Shown piece after piece: positions 5,223 through 21,737 of a DNA stretch of 64,000 nucleotides. The notes under the pieces are model-generated. The model was not told where the DNA came from. It did no database searches and saw only the letters and a list, made by a program, of their open reading frames with translations. This DNA is from Magallana gigas. Taxonomy: Eukaryota. Both the position numbers and the translations under genes were made by a program. Each line of letters starts with the position of its first letter. Position 1 is the stretch's first letter. The stretch lies in contig NC_088855.1 of the NCBI RefSeq assembly GCF_963853765.1, positions 27,342,001 through 27,406,000 of the forward strand. The letters are read 5' to 3'.

Positions 5223-7750
5223 CTATCGGTATGGCTTAATTTTTTCTTGGATGAAACCTCTGCATGTTGGACACTGAGTCACGAGCAAAGAGCAAACCTC
5301 ACATAGATTAAAATGATAGCACGGTCGAAGTAGGATTTCTACACGATGATCGAAGCAAACAATGCAGGTATCGTCATCGCTCTGTGTATCAGTTCCAGTG
5401 TTCTGGGTGGACGCGGGATTTTGACCACTGTTCACTGCATGTCGTCGATTGGTGCTAGCAGGTTGTGGTGAATTGATAACACCTCTGGGAGGATATCGTG
5501 GATGAAATGTTGGACACTGAGTCACGAGCAAAGAGCAAACCTCACATAGATTAAAATGATAGCACGGTCGAAGTAGGATTTCTACACGATGATCGAAGCA
5601 AACAATGCAGGTATCGTCATCGCTCTGTGTATCAGTTCCAGTGTTCTGGGTGGACGCGGGATTTTGACCACTGTTCACTGCATGTCGTCGATTGGTGCTA
5701 GCAGGTTGTGGTGAATTGATAACACCTCTGGGAGGATATCGTGGATGATTTTCTTCATTGGACGGCGGGATATAGTATAGATATGCATCAGGCGGGGCTA
5801 AAGGTACCGGTATGTTTACATGAACATCACGGTTGTTAACAATTTCACCGGGTTGTTGAGATTGGTTTGTTGTTTCATTATTTGAAATCGTTTGAATGGA
5901 GTCTAAAACAAAACAGAAAATAAATACCGGTATAACAGTCAAATTTCAAAGTAAAACGGAGAGATTTGAATTGTAGAGGGTTTTGTTAATGTTCATATAT
6001 ATACTAGTATATGTTCACCAGAACCGAACTTTTGGCAGATTGAGCATTTTACATCCGCACGTTATAAAGAACATAGATTCCATAAAAAATAGTTAAATGA
6101 AAAAAGTCTATAAATCAGACTATTCATTTGCACAATTACTTAAAACAAACGTTAAACACTGTTTAACTAACTTAGGATTTTTAAAATTGATTTGACATGA
6201 AATACTTTCTTTTAGATAAAAAAAAATAATTTTAAATTACGATATATATTACCTGAATTCGGTAATGTAAACATATATATAGATCCGGATACTAGATGAG
6301 CAAATCCGGCTAAAATTGAGAAAGCAAATGACCAGGACAGATAGTAGCCCTTCAGCCACCCTGCATAACGGTATTGTCCACCGTAAATACTGCTTCCTAT
6401 TAACATACTGCAGGCTGAAATAAAAAGAACATGGTTGATGAAAATGTGTTTAAATATGATATTACGATTGCTTAAAGAATAATCAATAAGCTGTATTAAC
6501 GATATTGACTACGCTTTTTAAGTGAGAGAGATGTAGTCGTAATTTGTTTTGCGTGTAATGTTACATATATGTACCTGCTACAAAATTTATTACCACTGCA
6601 GCAACTTGAGAGTCTCTCTTTCTGTCTGTTATAATAAGGAACGTACAGAAAATGGACGACACGACTGACGCAAGAGACATGAGGAGACCAATACTTTGGA
6701 AGAATCTGGTAGCGTGAAGCCATGCTAAAAATAATAAATAAATAAAAATATTTATAAAGATATTGAAATTTGATTGTATTAGGTTTGGTCAGATGCGAAA
6801 AGAATCCTTCACTTAAAGGGACTTGGACACGATTTGACTTAAAATTTTCAAATTTCAGTTTTCCATTTTTCAATGTTTATAATGATAAATATAGAAGTTT
6901 ATAATGCTATATCAAAATTTAAAAGTCAAATATCAAGTTATAAGCAAGTTACAGGGTTCATAATTCTTTGTTTTGTAAACAAAGCTCGAATATTGTCATT
7001 TTTATATATGTGCTGTATTGGTGTAAGTTTCAATCAAATGTATCTTTCTTTTGTTGCAATTGATATTAGTATTTATGAAGATACTGAATTAGTTTAAATT
7101 GTTTTTACATGTCATTTTGTCTAAGAAATGGTAAGTCTCTACATTACATTTTTTGTAAACAACTATAAGACTCGAGCTTTGTTTACATAACAACCAATTC
7201 TTACCTCTGTATCTCTCTCGTAACTTGACTTTAACATTCAATATTTTGGTCAAGCATTTAAAATGCACCAGTAAACCATTTTATACATAAAAAATAAAAA
7301 TAATTTTTTTGATCTCAAATCGTGTCCAAGTCCCTTTAATTGACTCAGAGATATTGAAAAAAAGAATTATTTAAATCGAAAGTGTCATTAAATTGAAAAA
7401 AAAAACCCAAATAGAACAGATGGAAACAAACCATTATATCACTTTTGTTACAATAATTGACCAAGCCTTTCAAGCTTACCCGGTACATCTTGATTTCTGT
7501 ACATCAGGAAGTAACTGACTGATTGACGGCAAGTGATGTCTGTGTTACTGAGCGACTTGCTACAGTGGTTCCAGAGCCCTTGGTTGCTCTCTGTTGGTCC
7601 CTCTGACAGTTCCACCCAACTGTCTGTGCCATAGGACAGGAAGGTATGGAGAAACCATGCGATGGTTGTGAGTAAGAGACACGCTCGGCAGTCTTTAGGG
7701 GAATCACAAAAAGTGTCTATAGAACTGGCTAGTTTTTCCGTCACCGTCAT
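5223..7750 (-). CDS. Claudin-like tetraspan fused to Pro-rich tail and duplicated RING (copy B, about 420 aa)
   Basis: Exons 7480-7750, 6575-6724, 6253-6414, 5223-5902; all introns GT-AG, phase 1; total 1263 nt with no internal stop. Four hydrophobic segments, GLWNHC..C and YYLSWSF motifs, C-terminal CIVC..PCYH..CEVC..CPTCR RING. Last exon has a 243-bp internal duplication. Confidence 0.8.
5264..5748. repeat. Perfect 243-bp in-frame tandem duplication inside the last exon of copy B
   Basis: ATGTTGGACACTGAG starts at 5264 and 5507; the 81-aa unit is repeated in the translation. Confidence 0.95.
6817..7335. mobile_element. MITE with TTAA target duplication (Kolobok-like) in intron 1 of copy B
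   Basis: TTAA|AGGGACTTGGACACGATTTGA ... TCAAATCGTGTCCAAGTCCCT|TTAA. The homologous site in copy C (about 13150) is empty. Confidence 0.85.
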
Positions 7751-19964: not shown

Positions 19965-21737
19965 CTACCGGAATGGTTTTATTTTATCTTGGATAGCACC
20001 CCGGCATGTTGGGCATTGATTCAGGGACCTGGAACATACTTCACATAAATTGAAATGATTGCATGGTCGAAGTAAAATTTCCGAACGACGGTCCAAACAA
20101 ACAACGCAGGTATCGTTGTCGTTTTGGGTATCATTTCCAGCATTCTGGGTGGACGAGGGATTTTGACCACTGTTCAGTGGATGTCGTTGACTGGTGCTTG
20201 CAGGATATTGTGGACTGGTGTTGCTGGGAGGATATGGTGGATTGGTGAAGCTGCTGGGCGGATATTGTGGATGATATCCACCACCAGGCGGTGGAATATA
20301 GTAAGCCGGATCAGGAGGAGGGGCTGAAGGTTCTGCTCTATACGCATTATGGTTGTTCACATTTGCACCGGGTGGTTGAAGTTGGTTTGGTGTTGGTTGA
20401 ATGGAGGCTGGAACGTCCCAGAAAAAAATAAAACATATTTTTGAATTTCAAATATTATTTCCTGGTTTGAGAAGAAAACTTTAGATTAGCAAGGAATATT
20501 TTTGTAAGGCAAGAATGATCATGCGAATTGAATCAATACGCCAAAACAAACGTTTGCCATAGACATACACATGCACCATGCAGTGTTATTAACACCTCCC
20601 AAACATTGTATCAATATAAAGAATTAATAAAAATCAGTTTGTTTTAAAGCATTTCAGATCTACATCATAATCAATGCAAAACATTCAACAAATAAAACAA
20701 TTAAGTTGCACAATCATCTTCAACAAACGTTAAACACTGTTTAAGAATTGACGTAACAGATTAAAAATTTCTATGTGAATTTAATTTACTAAATTTAATA
20801 CCTAAATCCGCAGGGGCAAACATATATATAGATCCAGCGACCAAATGAGCAACTCCGGCTAAAATTGAGAAAGCAAAAGACCAGGACAGATAGTAGCCCT
20901 TCAGCCAAGTTACATATCGGTATTGGCCACCGTAAATACTGCTTCCTATTAACATACTGCCAGCTGAAATGAAAAGAAACGGCCAACTGTTTAAATAGAA
21001 TAATGCATTTTTTGAAATCAGTTGAGATATGAGTTTTAACGAATAATTTTACCTGCAACAAAATTCATCACCGCCGCAGCAACTTGCGCGTCCCTCTTTT
21101 TGAAGGTTTTCCTAACGAACGTACAGAAAATTGACGACACAACAGAAGTCAGAGACATTAGGAGACCAGCACTTTGAAAAAATCGTGTGGCATGAAGCCA
21201 TGCTGAAAAACAAAGTTGAATATAAAAAGAAAGAAAGAAAGGTAAAACTTGTTTACACGGAATATTGATTATGTGATTAACCAATAACCATGCACCTTAT
21301 TCTCCTTGCATTAGTAAAGTTGAAAAATAATGCTTTCATCAAAATTGACAAAAATAAATAAAAATAGAATAAATAGCCAACAGATCAAATGAAGATGAAC
21401 ACAAAACATCATCGTTAAATCTTCTTTCAAGCCCAATTATTGATCTTAAAAGTCTTTCAAGCTTACCTGGTACGCCTTGATTACTATACTCCATAAAATT
21501 GGTGACTGATTGACGGCAAGTGATGTCTGTGTTACTGATGGTCTTGCTACAGTGGTTCCAGAGTCCTTGGTTGCTCTCTGTTGGTCCCTCCGACAGTTCC
21601 ACCCAGTTGTCTGTGCCATAGGACAGGAAGGTGTGGAGAAAGCATGCGAGAATTGTGATAAAGAAGCAAGCTCGACTTCCTTTGGGCGAATCACAAAACG
21701 TGTCTATAGAAGCGGCTAGTTCCCCCGTCACGGTCAT
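19965..21737 (-). CDS. Claudin-like tetraspan-RING fusion (copy D, most divergent, about 341 aa)
   Basis: Exons 21467-21737, 21053-21202, 20802-20963, 19965-20407; phase-1 GT-AG introns; 1026 nt open. Junction APADL/A/SIQP; PSAP and PPYP motifs; RING CVVC..PCNH..CEVC..CPTCR ending KIKPFR*. Confidence 0.85.

What the first reader, a model, noticed from the sequence alone, without database searches (positions are those of the whole stretch)
5223..21737. Claudin-like tetraspan fused to a RING finger: candidate membrane-embedded E3 ligase family
Seen: the ORF track shows claudin and RING pieces separately, but they splice into one gene three times. Exon 3 ends right after TM4 at a G|GT donor (6253, 12597, 20802) and the RING exon begins at an AG acceptor (5902, 12184, 20407) in matching phase 1. 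None of the three RING ORFs contains an ATG, so they cannot be stand-alone genes. The junction is kept in divergent copy D although the intron sequence differs. Established: four-pass claudin/PMP22 proteins have a cytoplasmic C-terminus, which places the RING correctly. Tetraspans and E3s cooperate as separate proteins in MOSMO-MEGF8-MGRN1 and SUSD6-TMEM127-WWP2. Inference: here tetraspan and ligase are one polypeptide that may ubiquitinate neighbouring membrane proteins. I know of no described claudin-RING fusion but could not search.
Basis: partly seen in the sequence, partly recalled or inferred. Interest (0 to 1): 0.93.

Follow-up and report, generated by a model that had tools for sequence, protein, structure and literature searches.

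The report
Claudin-fold membrane protein fused to RING ligase
Three tandem oyster genes each encode one protein joining a four-pass claudin-type membrane domain to a ubiquitin-ligase RING finger; spliced transcripts confirm the design, it is conserved in oysters, scallops and mussels, and no searchable paper describes it.

Summary
Three minus-strand genes (B 5223-7750, C 11766-13566, D 19965-21737) each have four GT-AG exons with phase-1 introns. The RING-exon ORFs contain no Met.

Intronless contigs from three sequencing runs of related oysters join exon 3 to the RING exon at this junction. RefSeq already models the same protein in Crassostrea gigas as "uncharacterized".

The N-terminal 190 residues pass the Pfam PMP22_Claudin threshold, carry the W-GLW-C-C signature and fold as a claudin (best match MP20, TM 0.80). 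A disordered linker of about 100 residues follows, with a conserved P(S/T)AP motif. The tail is a complete C3HC4 RING closest to cIAP1.

The fusion occurs in Ostreidae, Pectinidae and Mytilus. A scallop gene keeps the same three intron positions and phases. Both domains are under purifying selection.

My reading is a membrane-embedded RING E3 that may also recruit ESCRT-I. Ligase activity and targets are untested.

The assembly gap lies between genes and touches no exon or intron of B, C or D.

No paper in the searchable library describes the architecture, so I rate it a new variant of a known kind. A sibling protein carries a PARP tail instead of the RING.

The parts
5223..7750 (-). Copy B, 420 aa. 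Exons are 7750-7480, 6724-6575, 6414-6253 and 5902-5223. The complete RING lies at about 5244-5375. A truncated first RING (about 5496-5618) lacks the last Cys pair.
   Evidence: Model and splice sites. Two zf-C3HC4_3 stretches on exon 4. 93.7% identical to C. gigas XP_011411944.1.
5264..5748 (-). Perfect 243-nt in-frame tandem duplication inside copy B's RING exon. It may be a recent event or an assembly artefact.
   Evidence: TRF reports period 243, 2.0 copies and 100% matches. No database protein carries it; best query coverage was 61%.
11766..13566 (-). Copy C, 333 aa. Exons are 13566-13296, 13068-12919, 12758-12597 and 12184-11766. PSAP lies at 12075-12086 and the RING at about 11787-11918.
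   Evidence: 96.4% identical to RefSeq XP_011411944.1 (P0005).
19965..21737 (-). Copy D, 341 aa. Exons are 21737-21467, 21202-21053, 20963-20802 and 20407-19965. PSAP lies at 20319-20330 and the RING at about 19986-20117.
   Evidence: The exon blocks match intronless contigs L001, L002 and L003. 88% identical to P0008.
594..864 (-). Exon 1 of a fourth copy (A). The rest of the gene lies beyond the window start.
   Evidence: tblastn gives 91% identity to B's exon 1. Translation and GT donor. By eye, the 90 residues match the N-terminus of P0013 (C. angulata LOC128187469).
22351..25015 (+). RING-less claudin-like paralog, 193 aa, arranged head-to-head with copy D. Exons are 22351-22603, 22725-22865 and 24828-25015. 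The assembly gap 23732-23874 lies in its last intron.
   Evidence: The same divergent gene pair occurs on L001, L002 and at the scallop locus L007.
14157..14613 (+). Degenerate copy (in-frame stops) of exons 1-2 of the RING-less paralog, head-to-head with copy C.
   Evidence: tblastn matches that contain stop codons.
18670..18864 (+). Degenerate copy (in-frame stops) of the last exon of the RING-less paralog, on the far side of the gap at 17999-18130.
17999..18130 (.). Assembly gap, intergenic with respect to copies C and D. Left unfilled.

Best explanation
Each of the three genes encodes a single membrane-embedded RING E3 ubiquitin ligase.

Anatomy:
- Residues 1 to about 190 form a claudin-fold tetraspan: four transmembrane helices, an extracellular beta-sheet carrying the W-GLW-C-C signature, and both termini in the cytoplasm.
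- A disordered Pro/Tyr/Gln-rich cytoplasmic linker of about 100 residues follows. It carries a conserved P(S/T)AP motif.
- The C-terminus is an IAP-type C3HC4 RING that ends in a conserved aromatic residue two or three positions from the end.

Proposed mechanism (inferred):
- The tetraspan places the protein in a particular membrane and docks laterally on partner membrane proteins. Other claudin-fold proteins do this: TARPs, GARLH/LHFPL4, the Cav gamma subunit and MOSMO.
- The tethered RING probably acts as a dimer, like IAP RINGs. It would recruit an E2~ubiquitin and modify cytoplasmic lysines of those neighbours or of the protein itself.
- The P(S/T)AP motif would bind the UEV domain of TSG101 (ESCRT-I) and route the ubiquitinated cargo to multivesicular bodies.

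Origin: the fusion arose before oysters, scallops and mussels diverged. It is tandemly expanded in Crassostrea.

Shown here: one mRNA and one ORF, both folds, conservation and purifying selection. Inferred: ligase activity, dimerisation, TSG101 binding and the identity of the substrates.
For: One gene:
- Splice sites and phases are canonical and consistent.
- The RING ORFs contain no Met.
- Intronless contigs from SRR21102249, SRR32622307 and SRR32622311 are collinear with D's exons. Their alignment blocks end at 21469|21203, at 21053|20966-20969 and at 20799-20805|20408.
- L003 carries the fused ORF alone.

Conservation:
- Fused proteins occur in C. gigas, C. virginica, two Saccostrea species, Ostrea edulis, Argopecten, Pecten, Mizuhopecten and Mytilus.
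- The Argopecten gene has the same three intron positions, all in phase 1, and its RING is in the last exon.

Folds:
- Pfam scores against their thresholds: PMP22_Claudin 44 bits against 26.7, Claudin_2 36.9 against 29.1, zf-C3HC4_3 47.7 against 27.
- In the AlphaFold model the tetraspan has pLDDT about 72-96, residues 194-296 are disordered and the RING has pLDDT 76-85.
- Foldseek top matches are MP20 (TMt 0.80), TARPs, GARLH4, the Cav gamma subunit and claudins 3, 4, 9 and 19, all at probability 1.00.
- The RING is closest to cIAP1, cIAP2, BIRC7, CGRRF1 and XIAP (E 2e-12 to 1e-7). In the cIAP1, cIAP2 and BIRC7 alignments shown, the Zn-ligand positions line up.

Invariant residues across 12 sequences: W45, G58, L59, C63 and C74; eight Zn ligands; and P221 and P224 of the P(S/T)AP motif.

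P(S/T)AP: it is present in 10 of 13 linkers, against a shuffle expectation of 0.4-7% per linker.

Selection: dN/dS is 0.17-0.27 for the tetraspan, 0.10-0.19 for the RING in the deeper comparisons, and 0.30-0.64 for the linker.

Precedent: MGRN1 (PSAP) and LRSAM1/TAL (PTAP-PSAP) are RING E3s that bind TSG101 through this motif (PMC7073217, PMC13161197). The claudin-fold protein MOSMO is part of the MEGF8-MGRN1 receptor-type E3 (bioRxiv 10.1101/2025.09.11.675358).
Against: - No biochemical data exist for any member. E3 activity, dimerisation, localisation and substrates are all unknown.
- The transcript contigs come from related species or alleles (about 80-91% nucleotide identity), not provably from the window's own individual. 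I could not check the library type of those runs.
- RING-less models exist for close paralogs (P0013, P0014, P0011). Intron 3 of copies C and D holds poly(A)-signal hexamers, so a RING-less isoform may be common.
- P(S/T)AP is absent from Argopecten (PNAP), Mizuhopecten and Mytilus, and from copy B here (PLAP).
- The RING resembles IAP RINGs rather than MGRN1's, so the parallel with MGRN1 is functional analogy only.
- The alignment behind the structure model has only 12 sequences.
Confidence: 0.6

Rival explanations
1. The main product is a RING-less claudin-like protein. The RING exon is added only in a minor or regulated isoform, through a choice between intron-3 polyadenylation and splicing. 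On this reading the ligase tail is a conditional add-on.
For: - RefSeq models P0013 (C. angulata, 211 aa) and P0014 (C. gigas, 199 aa) end just after exon 3. P0013 reads into intron 3.
- Intron 3 of C and D contains ATTAAA or AATAAA, and read-through stops after 3-13 codons.
- These RING-less forms nest inside the RING-bearing Crassostrea clade (support 100/99).
Against: - The RING exon is under purifying selection in every copy compared.
- The fused ORF is what the intronless contigs carry in three runs.
- The fused architecture has been kept since oysters and scallops diverged.
Confidence: 0.2
2. The protein is a structural junction or adhesion claudin, and the RING acts only in cis. It would ubiquitinate its own tail to set its own turnover, with no outside substrates.
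For: - It has a claudin fold with an intact extracellular sheet signature.
- Vertebrate claudin levels are controlled by ubiquitination (general knowledge).
- A PSAP motif on the same chain would suffice for self-sorting.
Against: - The closest structural matches include auxiliary subunits that bind other membrane proteins (TARP, GARLH4, Cav gamma), as well as strand-forming claudins.
- There is no PDZ-binding C-terminus.
- Self-regulation and substrate targeting are not mutually exclusive.
Confidence: 0.15
3. The RING is a non-catalytic scaffold (a pseudo-E3), or it regulates TSG101/ESCRT-I itself rather than membrane cargo, as reported for MGRN1 and LRSAM1. This might serve antiviral defence in oysters.
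For: - The combination of P(S/T)AP and a zf-C3HC4_3 RING is the one reported for the TSG101-directed ligases MGRN1 and LRSAM1 (PMC7073217). That their RINGs are of the zf-C3HC4_3 class is from memory and was not tested here.
- The tandem expansion, with gain and loss of copies, resembles immune gene families.
Against: - All eight Zn ligands, the hydrophobic residue between the first two Cys, the Pro of the CP.C motif and the C-terminal aromatic are conserved. This argues for catalysis.
- No expression or infection data were available to me.
Confidence: 0.15
4. The claudin-like and RING pieces are separate genes, and the apparent fusion is an artefact of gene prediction or transcript assembly.
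For: - Short Logan contigs (P0001-P0003) carry the RING exon together with translated intron sequence.
- The UniProt model K1Q579 is clearly mis-merged.
- L001 and L002 also join the neighbouring divergent gene, so the assemblies are not clean single transcripts.
Against: - The RING ORFs have no start codon.
- Splice signals are canonical and the phases match in three diverged copies.
- L003 holds the fused ORF alone.
- The same architecture, with conserved intron phase, is annotated independently in a scallop, and the architecture is also annotated in a mussel.
Confidence: 0.03

Closest known systems
MOSMO-MEGF8-MGRN1 receptor-type E3 ligase (vertebrates)
   Same: A claudin-fold tetraspan in the membrane works with a cytoplasmic RING E3. 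MGRN1 has a PSAP motif in a disordered tail (bioRxiv 10.1101/2025.09.11.675358; PMC13161197).
   Different: In that complex, three separate proteins are involved and the single-pass protein MEGF8 bridges them. Here the tetraspan, PSAP linker and RING are one chain. The RING here is closest to IAP RINGs, and no MGRN1 engager domain was seen. MOSMO was not among the top 50 structural matches.
IAP-family RINGs (cIAP1/BIRC2, cIAP2, BIRC7, XIAP)
   Same: These are the best sequence matches to the RING (E 2e-12 to 1e-7). The cIAP1, cIAP2 and BIRC7 alignments shown share the C3HC4 spacing. By eye, a C-terminal aromatic sits where the IAP tail Phe is.
   Different: There is no BIR domain, so the UniProt name 'Putative apoptosis inhibitor ORF42' is not supported. 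The N-terminus here is a membrane domain.
PMP22/EMP/MP20 proteins, TARPs, LHFPL/GARLH and claudins (claudin superfamily)
   Same: The proteins pass the Pfam PMP22_Claudin and Claudin_2 thresholds and carry W-GLW-C-C. They have four helices plus an extracellular sheet. MP20 matches with TMt 0.80.
   Different: To my knowledge, none of the described members carries an enzymatic cytoplasmic domain. Here there is no PDZ-binding C-terminus.
MGRN1 and LRSAM1/TAL (TSG101-associated RING ligases)
   Same: A P(S/T)AP motif in a disordered region combined with a C-terminal RING (PMC7073217). That their RINGs are of the zf-C3HC4_3 class is from memory and was not tested here.
   Different: Those proteins are soluble or peripheral. 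Nothing outside the RING and the motif is shared.
Polytopic RING E3s (MARCH family, MUL1, RNF-type membrane ligases) and TMEM127-SUSD6-WWP2
   Same: The general idea is the same: a ligase is held at a membrane so that it can act on membrane proteins (general knowledge).
   Different: The membrane domains differ (two-helix hairpins, other folds) and so do the RING types (RING-CH in MARCH). WWP2 is a HECT ligase recruited non-covalently.

Membership tests
Claudin superfamily (Pfam PMP22_Claudin PF00822 / Claudin_2 PF13903) | Score above the curated Pfam threshold | tested here: met
   For P0008, PMP22_Claudin scores 44.0 bits against 26.7 and Claudin_2 scores 36.9 against 29.1. P0005 scores 38.1 and 29.2. 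Single exons from the window score below threshold, as expected for fragments.
Claudin superfamily | W-GLW-C-C signature in the first extracellular segment | tested here: met
   W45, G58, L59, C63 and C74 are invariant in 12 sequences. Position 60 is W in 10 sequences and F in two scallop sequences. All three window copies carry the signature.
Claudin superfamily | Four-helix bundle capped by an extracellular beta-sheet | tested here: met
   The AlphaFold model has helices at 19-40, 91-119, 125-155 and 168-189, four strands in segment 1, and pLDDT about 72-96. Foldseek gives probability 1.00 to MP20, TARPs and claudins. This is a prediction, not a solved structure.
Classical tight-junction claudins | C-terminal PDZ-binding motif and strand formation | tested here: not met
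   The C-terminus is the RING and ends in ...KPYR or ...KPFR. Strand formation cannot be tested with these tools.
RING E3 ligases (zf-C3HC4_3, PF13920) | Eight Zn ligands with C3HC4 spacing, and a score above the Pfam threshold | tested here: met
   The pattern is C-x2-C-x11-C-x-H-x3-C-x2-C-x6-C-x2-C, and all eight ligands are invariant. Scores are 40.7-55.8 bits against 27. The first, duplicated RING in copy B lacks the last Cys pair.
RING E3 ligases | E2-dependent ubiquitin transfer | not testable with these tools
   This needs an in vitro ubiquitination assay.
IAP (BIRC) family | At least one BIR domain | tested here: not met
   No BIR hit in any fused protein scanned. A true IAP, P0047, shows BIR in the same kind of scan.
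TSG101-binding late-domain proteins | P(S/T)AP motif in an accessible, disordered region | tested here: met
   Present in C (residue 228), D (221) and 10 of 13 family members. Chance expectation is 0.4-7% per linker. It lies in a region with pLDDT below 50. A weak Gag_p6 Pfam hit covers the motif. Copy B has PLAP instead. Binding itself was not tested.
MOSMO orthologues | Specific sequence or structural similarity to MOSMO above other claudin-fold proteins | tested here: inconclusive
   MOSMO did not appear among the 50 best PDB fold matches. No MOSMO sequence was at hand for a direct comparison.

The most novel reading that the evidence does not exclude
Pteriomorph bivalves may possess a family of self-contained 'claudin-fold writers'. 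In this reading one tetraspan scaffold docks on neighbouring membrane proteins and carries interchangeable cytoplasmic modifying enzymes. The enzyme is an IAP-type RING in the genes studied here and a PARP catalytic domain in the sibling P0030. A built-in ESCRT-I recruitment motif would complete the module, so a single polypeptide would do what the three-protein MOSMO-MEGF8-MGRN1 complex does in vertebrates. Read as a Rosetta-stone fusion, this would predict that claudin-fold tetraspans are general membrane adaptors for ubiquitin and ADP-ribose writers in other animals too.
Probability: 0.3. Interest if true: 0.78.

Novelty: new variant of a known kind. Interest (0 to 1): 0.6.

Why it matters
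Receptor-type and membrane-tethered E3 ligases control the surface levels of receptors and channels. How they find their substrates within the membrane plane is a current question, for example for MGRN1 with MEGF8, ATRN and MOSMO.

A natural covalent fusion of a claudin fold with a RING, kept since oysters, scallops and mussels diverged, is independent evolutionary evidence that this fold can serve as the membrane-side module of a ligase. It also offers a compact single-chain system for studying substrate selection and ESCRT hand-off.

For oyster biology, the family is tandemly expanded and gains and loses copies. One member is mislabelled as an apoptosis inhibitor, which may mislead studies of immunity and apoptosis.

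Tried and rejected
- **Separate RING genes:** rejected. The RING ORFs have no Met, and the contigs are spliced.
- **Gap interference:** rejected. The gap at 17999-18130 is intergenic with respect to B, C and D.
- **IAP membership (the UniProt name):** rejected, because there is no BIR domain.
- **PPxY motifs for NEDD4-type ligases:** only C. virginica P0012 has one (PPYY). The motif is not conserved, so I dropped the idea.
- **Pfam on single exons:** this gave only sub-threshold claudin hits. Full-length database orthologues were needed.
- **Sequence search of the tetraspan against PDB:** only MP20 at E 0.1. A fold search was needed.
- **Exact look-ups of P0005 and P0019 in the contig index:** nothing found.
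- **Literature searches for the fusion, the accessions and the Pfam pair:** nothing found. Two oyster and metazoan IAP papers mention neither claudin nor transmembrane architectures.
- **Searching the window's own spliced proteins directly:** not possible, because a spliced protein has no reference. Near-identical database proteins were used instead: P0005 for C (96.4% identity) and P0008 for D (88%).
- **Intron identities:** these come from a forgiving global alignment and should not be over-read.
- **Distribution outside bivalves:** not excluded. The exhaustive search lists only the best 150 hits, and RING-only proteins fill that list below E of about 1e-17.

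
Full report
**What the window is**

The window is AT-rich (31-39% G+C) eukaryotic DNA. The best protein matches are Crassostrea (Magallana) gigas and C. angulata RefSeq proteins. It is therefore an oyster chromosome segment.

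**Check of the observation**

I read the three stretches on the minus strand and assembled gene models.

| Copy | Exon 1 | Exon 2 | Exon 3 | Exon 4 | Protein |
|---|---|---|---|---|---|
| B | 7750-7480 | 6724-6575 | 6414-6253 | 5902-5223 | 420 aa |
| C | 13566-13296 | 13068-12919 | 12758-12597 | 12184-11766 | 333 aa |
| D | 21737-21467 | 21202-21053 | 20963-20802 | 20407-19965 | 341 aa |

- All nine introns are GT-AG, have polypyrimidine tracts and are in phase 1.
- Exons 1-3 have identical lengths (271, 150 and 162 nt) in all three copies.
- Each model is an uninterrupted ATG-to-stop ORF.
- The stop-to-stop ORFs around the RING exons contain no Met.
- D is only 72% identical to B and C at the protein level but keeps the junction.

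**The assembly gap**

The gap at 17999-18130 lies 1.8 kb downstream of D's stop and 4.4 kb upstream of C's ATG. No exon, intron or reading frame of the three genes touches it. What the gap leaves open is the true C-D spacing and whether more copies lie there. I did not try to fill it.

**Transcript evidence**

A search with B's RING ORF recovered full-length proteins that carry both PF00822 and PF13920. Among them is RefSeq XP_011411944.1 (C. gigas LOC105317106, "uncharacterized"), which is 96.4% identical to copy C.

P0008 (88% identical to D) and P0010 are encoded as contiguous ORFs on short Logan contigs from three different sequencing runs: L001, L002 and L003. These contigs align to the window in blocks whose ends fall at D's exon boundaries:

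- 21469|21203
- 21053|20966-20969
- 20799-20805|20408

The introns are absent, and the exon 3 / RING-exon join is directly visible. L003 carries the fused ORF alone.

These are spliced transcripts of orthologues at about 80-91% nucleotide identity. In the more distant species the donor is shifted by 6 nt but stays in frame. I could not check the library type of the runs. However, the loss of all introns of two neighbouring genes on one contig is only explained by cDNA.

**What the protein is**

*Tetraspan.* The full-length orthologues pass the curated Pfam thresholds for PMP22_Claudin, Claudin_2, L_HMGIC_fpl and zf-C3HC4_3. An alignment of 12 family members keeps W45, G58-L59, C63 and C74 invariant, with W or F at position 60. 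This is the claudin W-GLW-C-C signature.

*Predicted structure.* AlphaFold2 run on that alignment gives the following:

- a confident tetraspan (pLDDT about 72-96) with four helices and four strands in the first extracellular segment;
- a disordered stretch at 194-296;
- a folded RING (pLDDT 76-85).

Foldseek against the PDB returns MP20 (TMt 0.80, rmsd 2.9 A), TARP gamma-2 and gamma-8, GARLH4, the Cav1.1 gamma subunit and claudins 3, 4, 9 and 19, all at probability 1.00.

*RING.* By sequence it is closest to cIAP1, cIAP2, BIRC7, CGRRF1 and XIAP. It keeps:

- eight invariant Zn ligands;
- the hydrophobic residue between the first two Cys;
- the Pro of the CP.C motif;
- an Arg after the last ligand in most members;
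- a Tyr or Phe two or three residues from the C-terminus, where by eye the IAP tail Phe sits.

From my own knowledge, in BIRC7 that Phe acts across the RING dimer to prime E2~ubiquitin (Dou et al. 2012).

There is no BIR domain. The UniProt name "Putative apoptosis inhibitor ORF42" for K1Q579 is therefore a RING-similarity artefact. That model is also a mis-merge of two neighbouring genes.

**A conserved linker motif**

Little of the linker aligns between the more distant lineages apart from one short motif, P-[ST]-A-P. P221 and P224 are invariant and A223 is nearly so.

- The motif is present in 10 of 13 linkers. These include several oyster lineages, Pecten and an unidentified lineage (P0021).
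- The expectation from shuffled linkers is 0.4-7% each.
- Pfam gives a weak Gag_p6 hit over the motif.

P(S/T)AP is the TSG101-UEV ligand. MGRN1 (PSAP) and LRSAM1/TAL (PTAP-PSAP) are RING ligases that use it (PMC7073217; PMC13161197).

Copies C and D carry PSAP (12075-12086 and 20319-20330). Copy B has PLAP.

**Distribution and age**

I ran two word-indexed searches and one exhaustive profile search of 1.84 billion representatives. Name look-ups and Pfam scans followed. The fusion was found in:

- Crassostrea gigas and C. virginica (the one C. angulata relative recovered, P0013, is a RING-less model);
- Saccostrea echinata and S. cucullata;
- Ostrea edulis;
- Argopecten irradians, Pecten maximus and Mizuhopecten yessoensis;
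- Mytilus galloprovincialis.

All of these are unnamed or "uncharacterized". Nothing outside pteriomorph bivalves appeared. However, only the best 150 hits are listed, so absence elsewhere is not established.

The Argopecten gene (L007) has introns at the same three positions, all in phase 1. Even the exon-1 donor context is kept. Its RING is in the last exon, after one extra linker exon. The fusion therefore predates the oyster-scallop split.

**Selection**

| Region | dN/dS |
|---|---|
| Tetraspan | 0.17-0.27 |
| RING, deeper comparisons | 0.10-0.19 |
| RING, D against L001 (few changes) | 0.41 |
| Linker | 0.30-0.64 |

Both domains are constrained.

**Local genomics**

- The array has at least four copies. 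A fourth exon 1 lies at 864-594.
- Copy D sits head-to-head with an intact RING-less claudin-like paralog of 193 aa (22351-25015).
- The same divergent pair is seen on L001 and L002 and in the scallop locus.
- Next to copy C, that partner gene is degenerate (14157-14613 and 18670-18864).
- RING-less oyster proteins P0013, P0014 and P0011 nest inside the RING-bearing Crassostrea clade with 100/99 support. They are therefore secondary losses or truncated isoforms.
- Intron 3 of C and D contains poly(A)-signal hexamers, so a RING-less isoform is possible.

**Mechanism**

*Shown:* a single chain with the order cytoplasmic N-terminus, claudin-fold tetraspan, disordered linker with P(S/T)AP, and a C-terminal IAP-type RING.

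*From established knowledge:* the claudin topology puts the C-terminus in the cytoplasm, so the RING can meet E2 enzymes.

*Inferred:*

- The tetraspan localises the protein and docks on partner membrane proteins, as many of its closest structural relatives do.
- The RING, probably as a dimer, ubiquitinates those neighbours or the protein itself.
- PSAP hands the cargo to ESCRT-I.

My confidence for each step is about 0.95 for one polypeptide, about 0.7 for an active E3, and about 0.4 for neighbour-directed ubiquitination with ESCRT hand-off.

**Comparison with known systems and novelty**

The protein works like a one-chain version of a receptor-type E3 such as MOSMO-MEGF8-MGRN1 (bioRxiv 10.1101/2025.09.11.675358). 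It is not a member of that system. Its RING is IAP-like, there is no engager domain, and MOSMO was not among the top structural matches.

It is a member of the claudin superfamily and of the zf-C3HC4_3 RING class. It is not an IAP and not a classical tight-junction claudin.

Six literature searches and two targeted paper look-ups found no description of a claudin-RING protein. The architecture is therefore present in databases, but I found no paper describing or studying it. I rate it a new variant of a known kind.

**A sibling architecture**

Representative P0030 (459 aa) has the same tetraspan, 33% identical to P0008 with E 8e-23. It is fused to a PARP catalytic domain (Pfam E 4e-18). The closest PDB relatives of that domain are tankyrases and PARP12, 14 and 15. 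It is encoded as a contiguous ORF on contigs from two runs. This suggests a modular design in which one tetraspan carries different cytoplasmic writer domains.

Noticed in passing
window 5264-5748 (-): Copy B's RING exon has a perfect (100%) in-frame 243-nt tandem duplication. It produces a first RING that lacks the last Cys pair, followed by a complete RING. Copy B also has PLAP where the other copies have PSAP. No database protein shows the duplication, so it may be very recent or an assembly artefact.
   Followed up: partly
P0030; loci L005 138-1517 and L006 129-1508: A sibling protein has the same claudin-like tetraspan (33% identity to P0008, E 8e-23) fused to a C-terminal PARP catalytic domain instead of a RING. 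It is a contiguous ORF on contigs from two sequencing runs. The species is unknown.
   Followed up: partly
window 22351-25015 (+); L001 243-827; L002 260-841; L007 1-9384: A RING-less claudin-like paralog (about 190-194 aa) sits head-to-head with the fusion gene in this oyster, in two other oysters and in the scallop Argopecten. This is an old, conserved divergent gene pair and may be co-regulated. The intronless contigs L001 and L002 join both genes across the shared upstream region.
   Followed up: partly
window 14157-14613 and 18670-18864 (+): These are degenerate pieces (in-frame stops) of the RING-less paralog next to copy C, lying on either side of the gap at 17999-18130. The intact paralog's last intron also holds an assembly gap (23732-23874). 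Both gaps therefore fall in the equivalent region, perhaps at a repeat that is hard to assemble.
   Followed up: partly
window 594-864 (-): Exon 1 of a fourth family copy; the rest of the gene is outside the window. By eye, its 90 residues match the N-terminus of C. angulata LOC128187469 (P0013). That RefSeq model is RING-less (211 aa) and ends by reading into intron 3.
   Followed up: partly
P0004 (UniProt K1Q579_MAGGI): The 2012 C. gigas model named 'Putative apoptosis inhibitor ORF42' is a mis-merge. It joins exons 1-2 and part of the tail of a D-like gene to the tail of a C-like gene, and exon 3 is missing. The name is not supported, because there is no BIR domain.
   Followed up: yes
L003 around 715-725, against window 20802: In the more distant oyster species the exon-3 donor is shifted 6 nt downstream. 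This adds two residues and keeps phase 1.
   Followed up: no
L007 34960-35067 (+): The scallop gene has a decayed extra RING pseudo-exon (58% identity, in-frame stops) in the intron before the functional RING exon.
   Followed up: no
window 55241-56386 (+): A single-exon ORF of 381 aa encodes a rhodopsin-family GPCR (7tm_1, E 2e-23).
   Followed up: partly
window 35851-37131 (+): A 426-aa ORF in the most G+C-rich part of the window has no Pfam hit. By eye, its C-terminus holds two Cys-x2-Cys...Cys-x2-Cys stretches that look like small zinc fingers.
   Followed up: partly
window 4875-5114 and 11269-11673 (+): A repeated ORF-bearing element lies just downstream of copies B and C and has no Pfam hit. 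It appears to be part of the duplicated unit.
   Followed up: no
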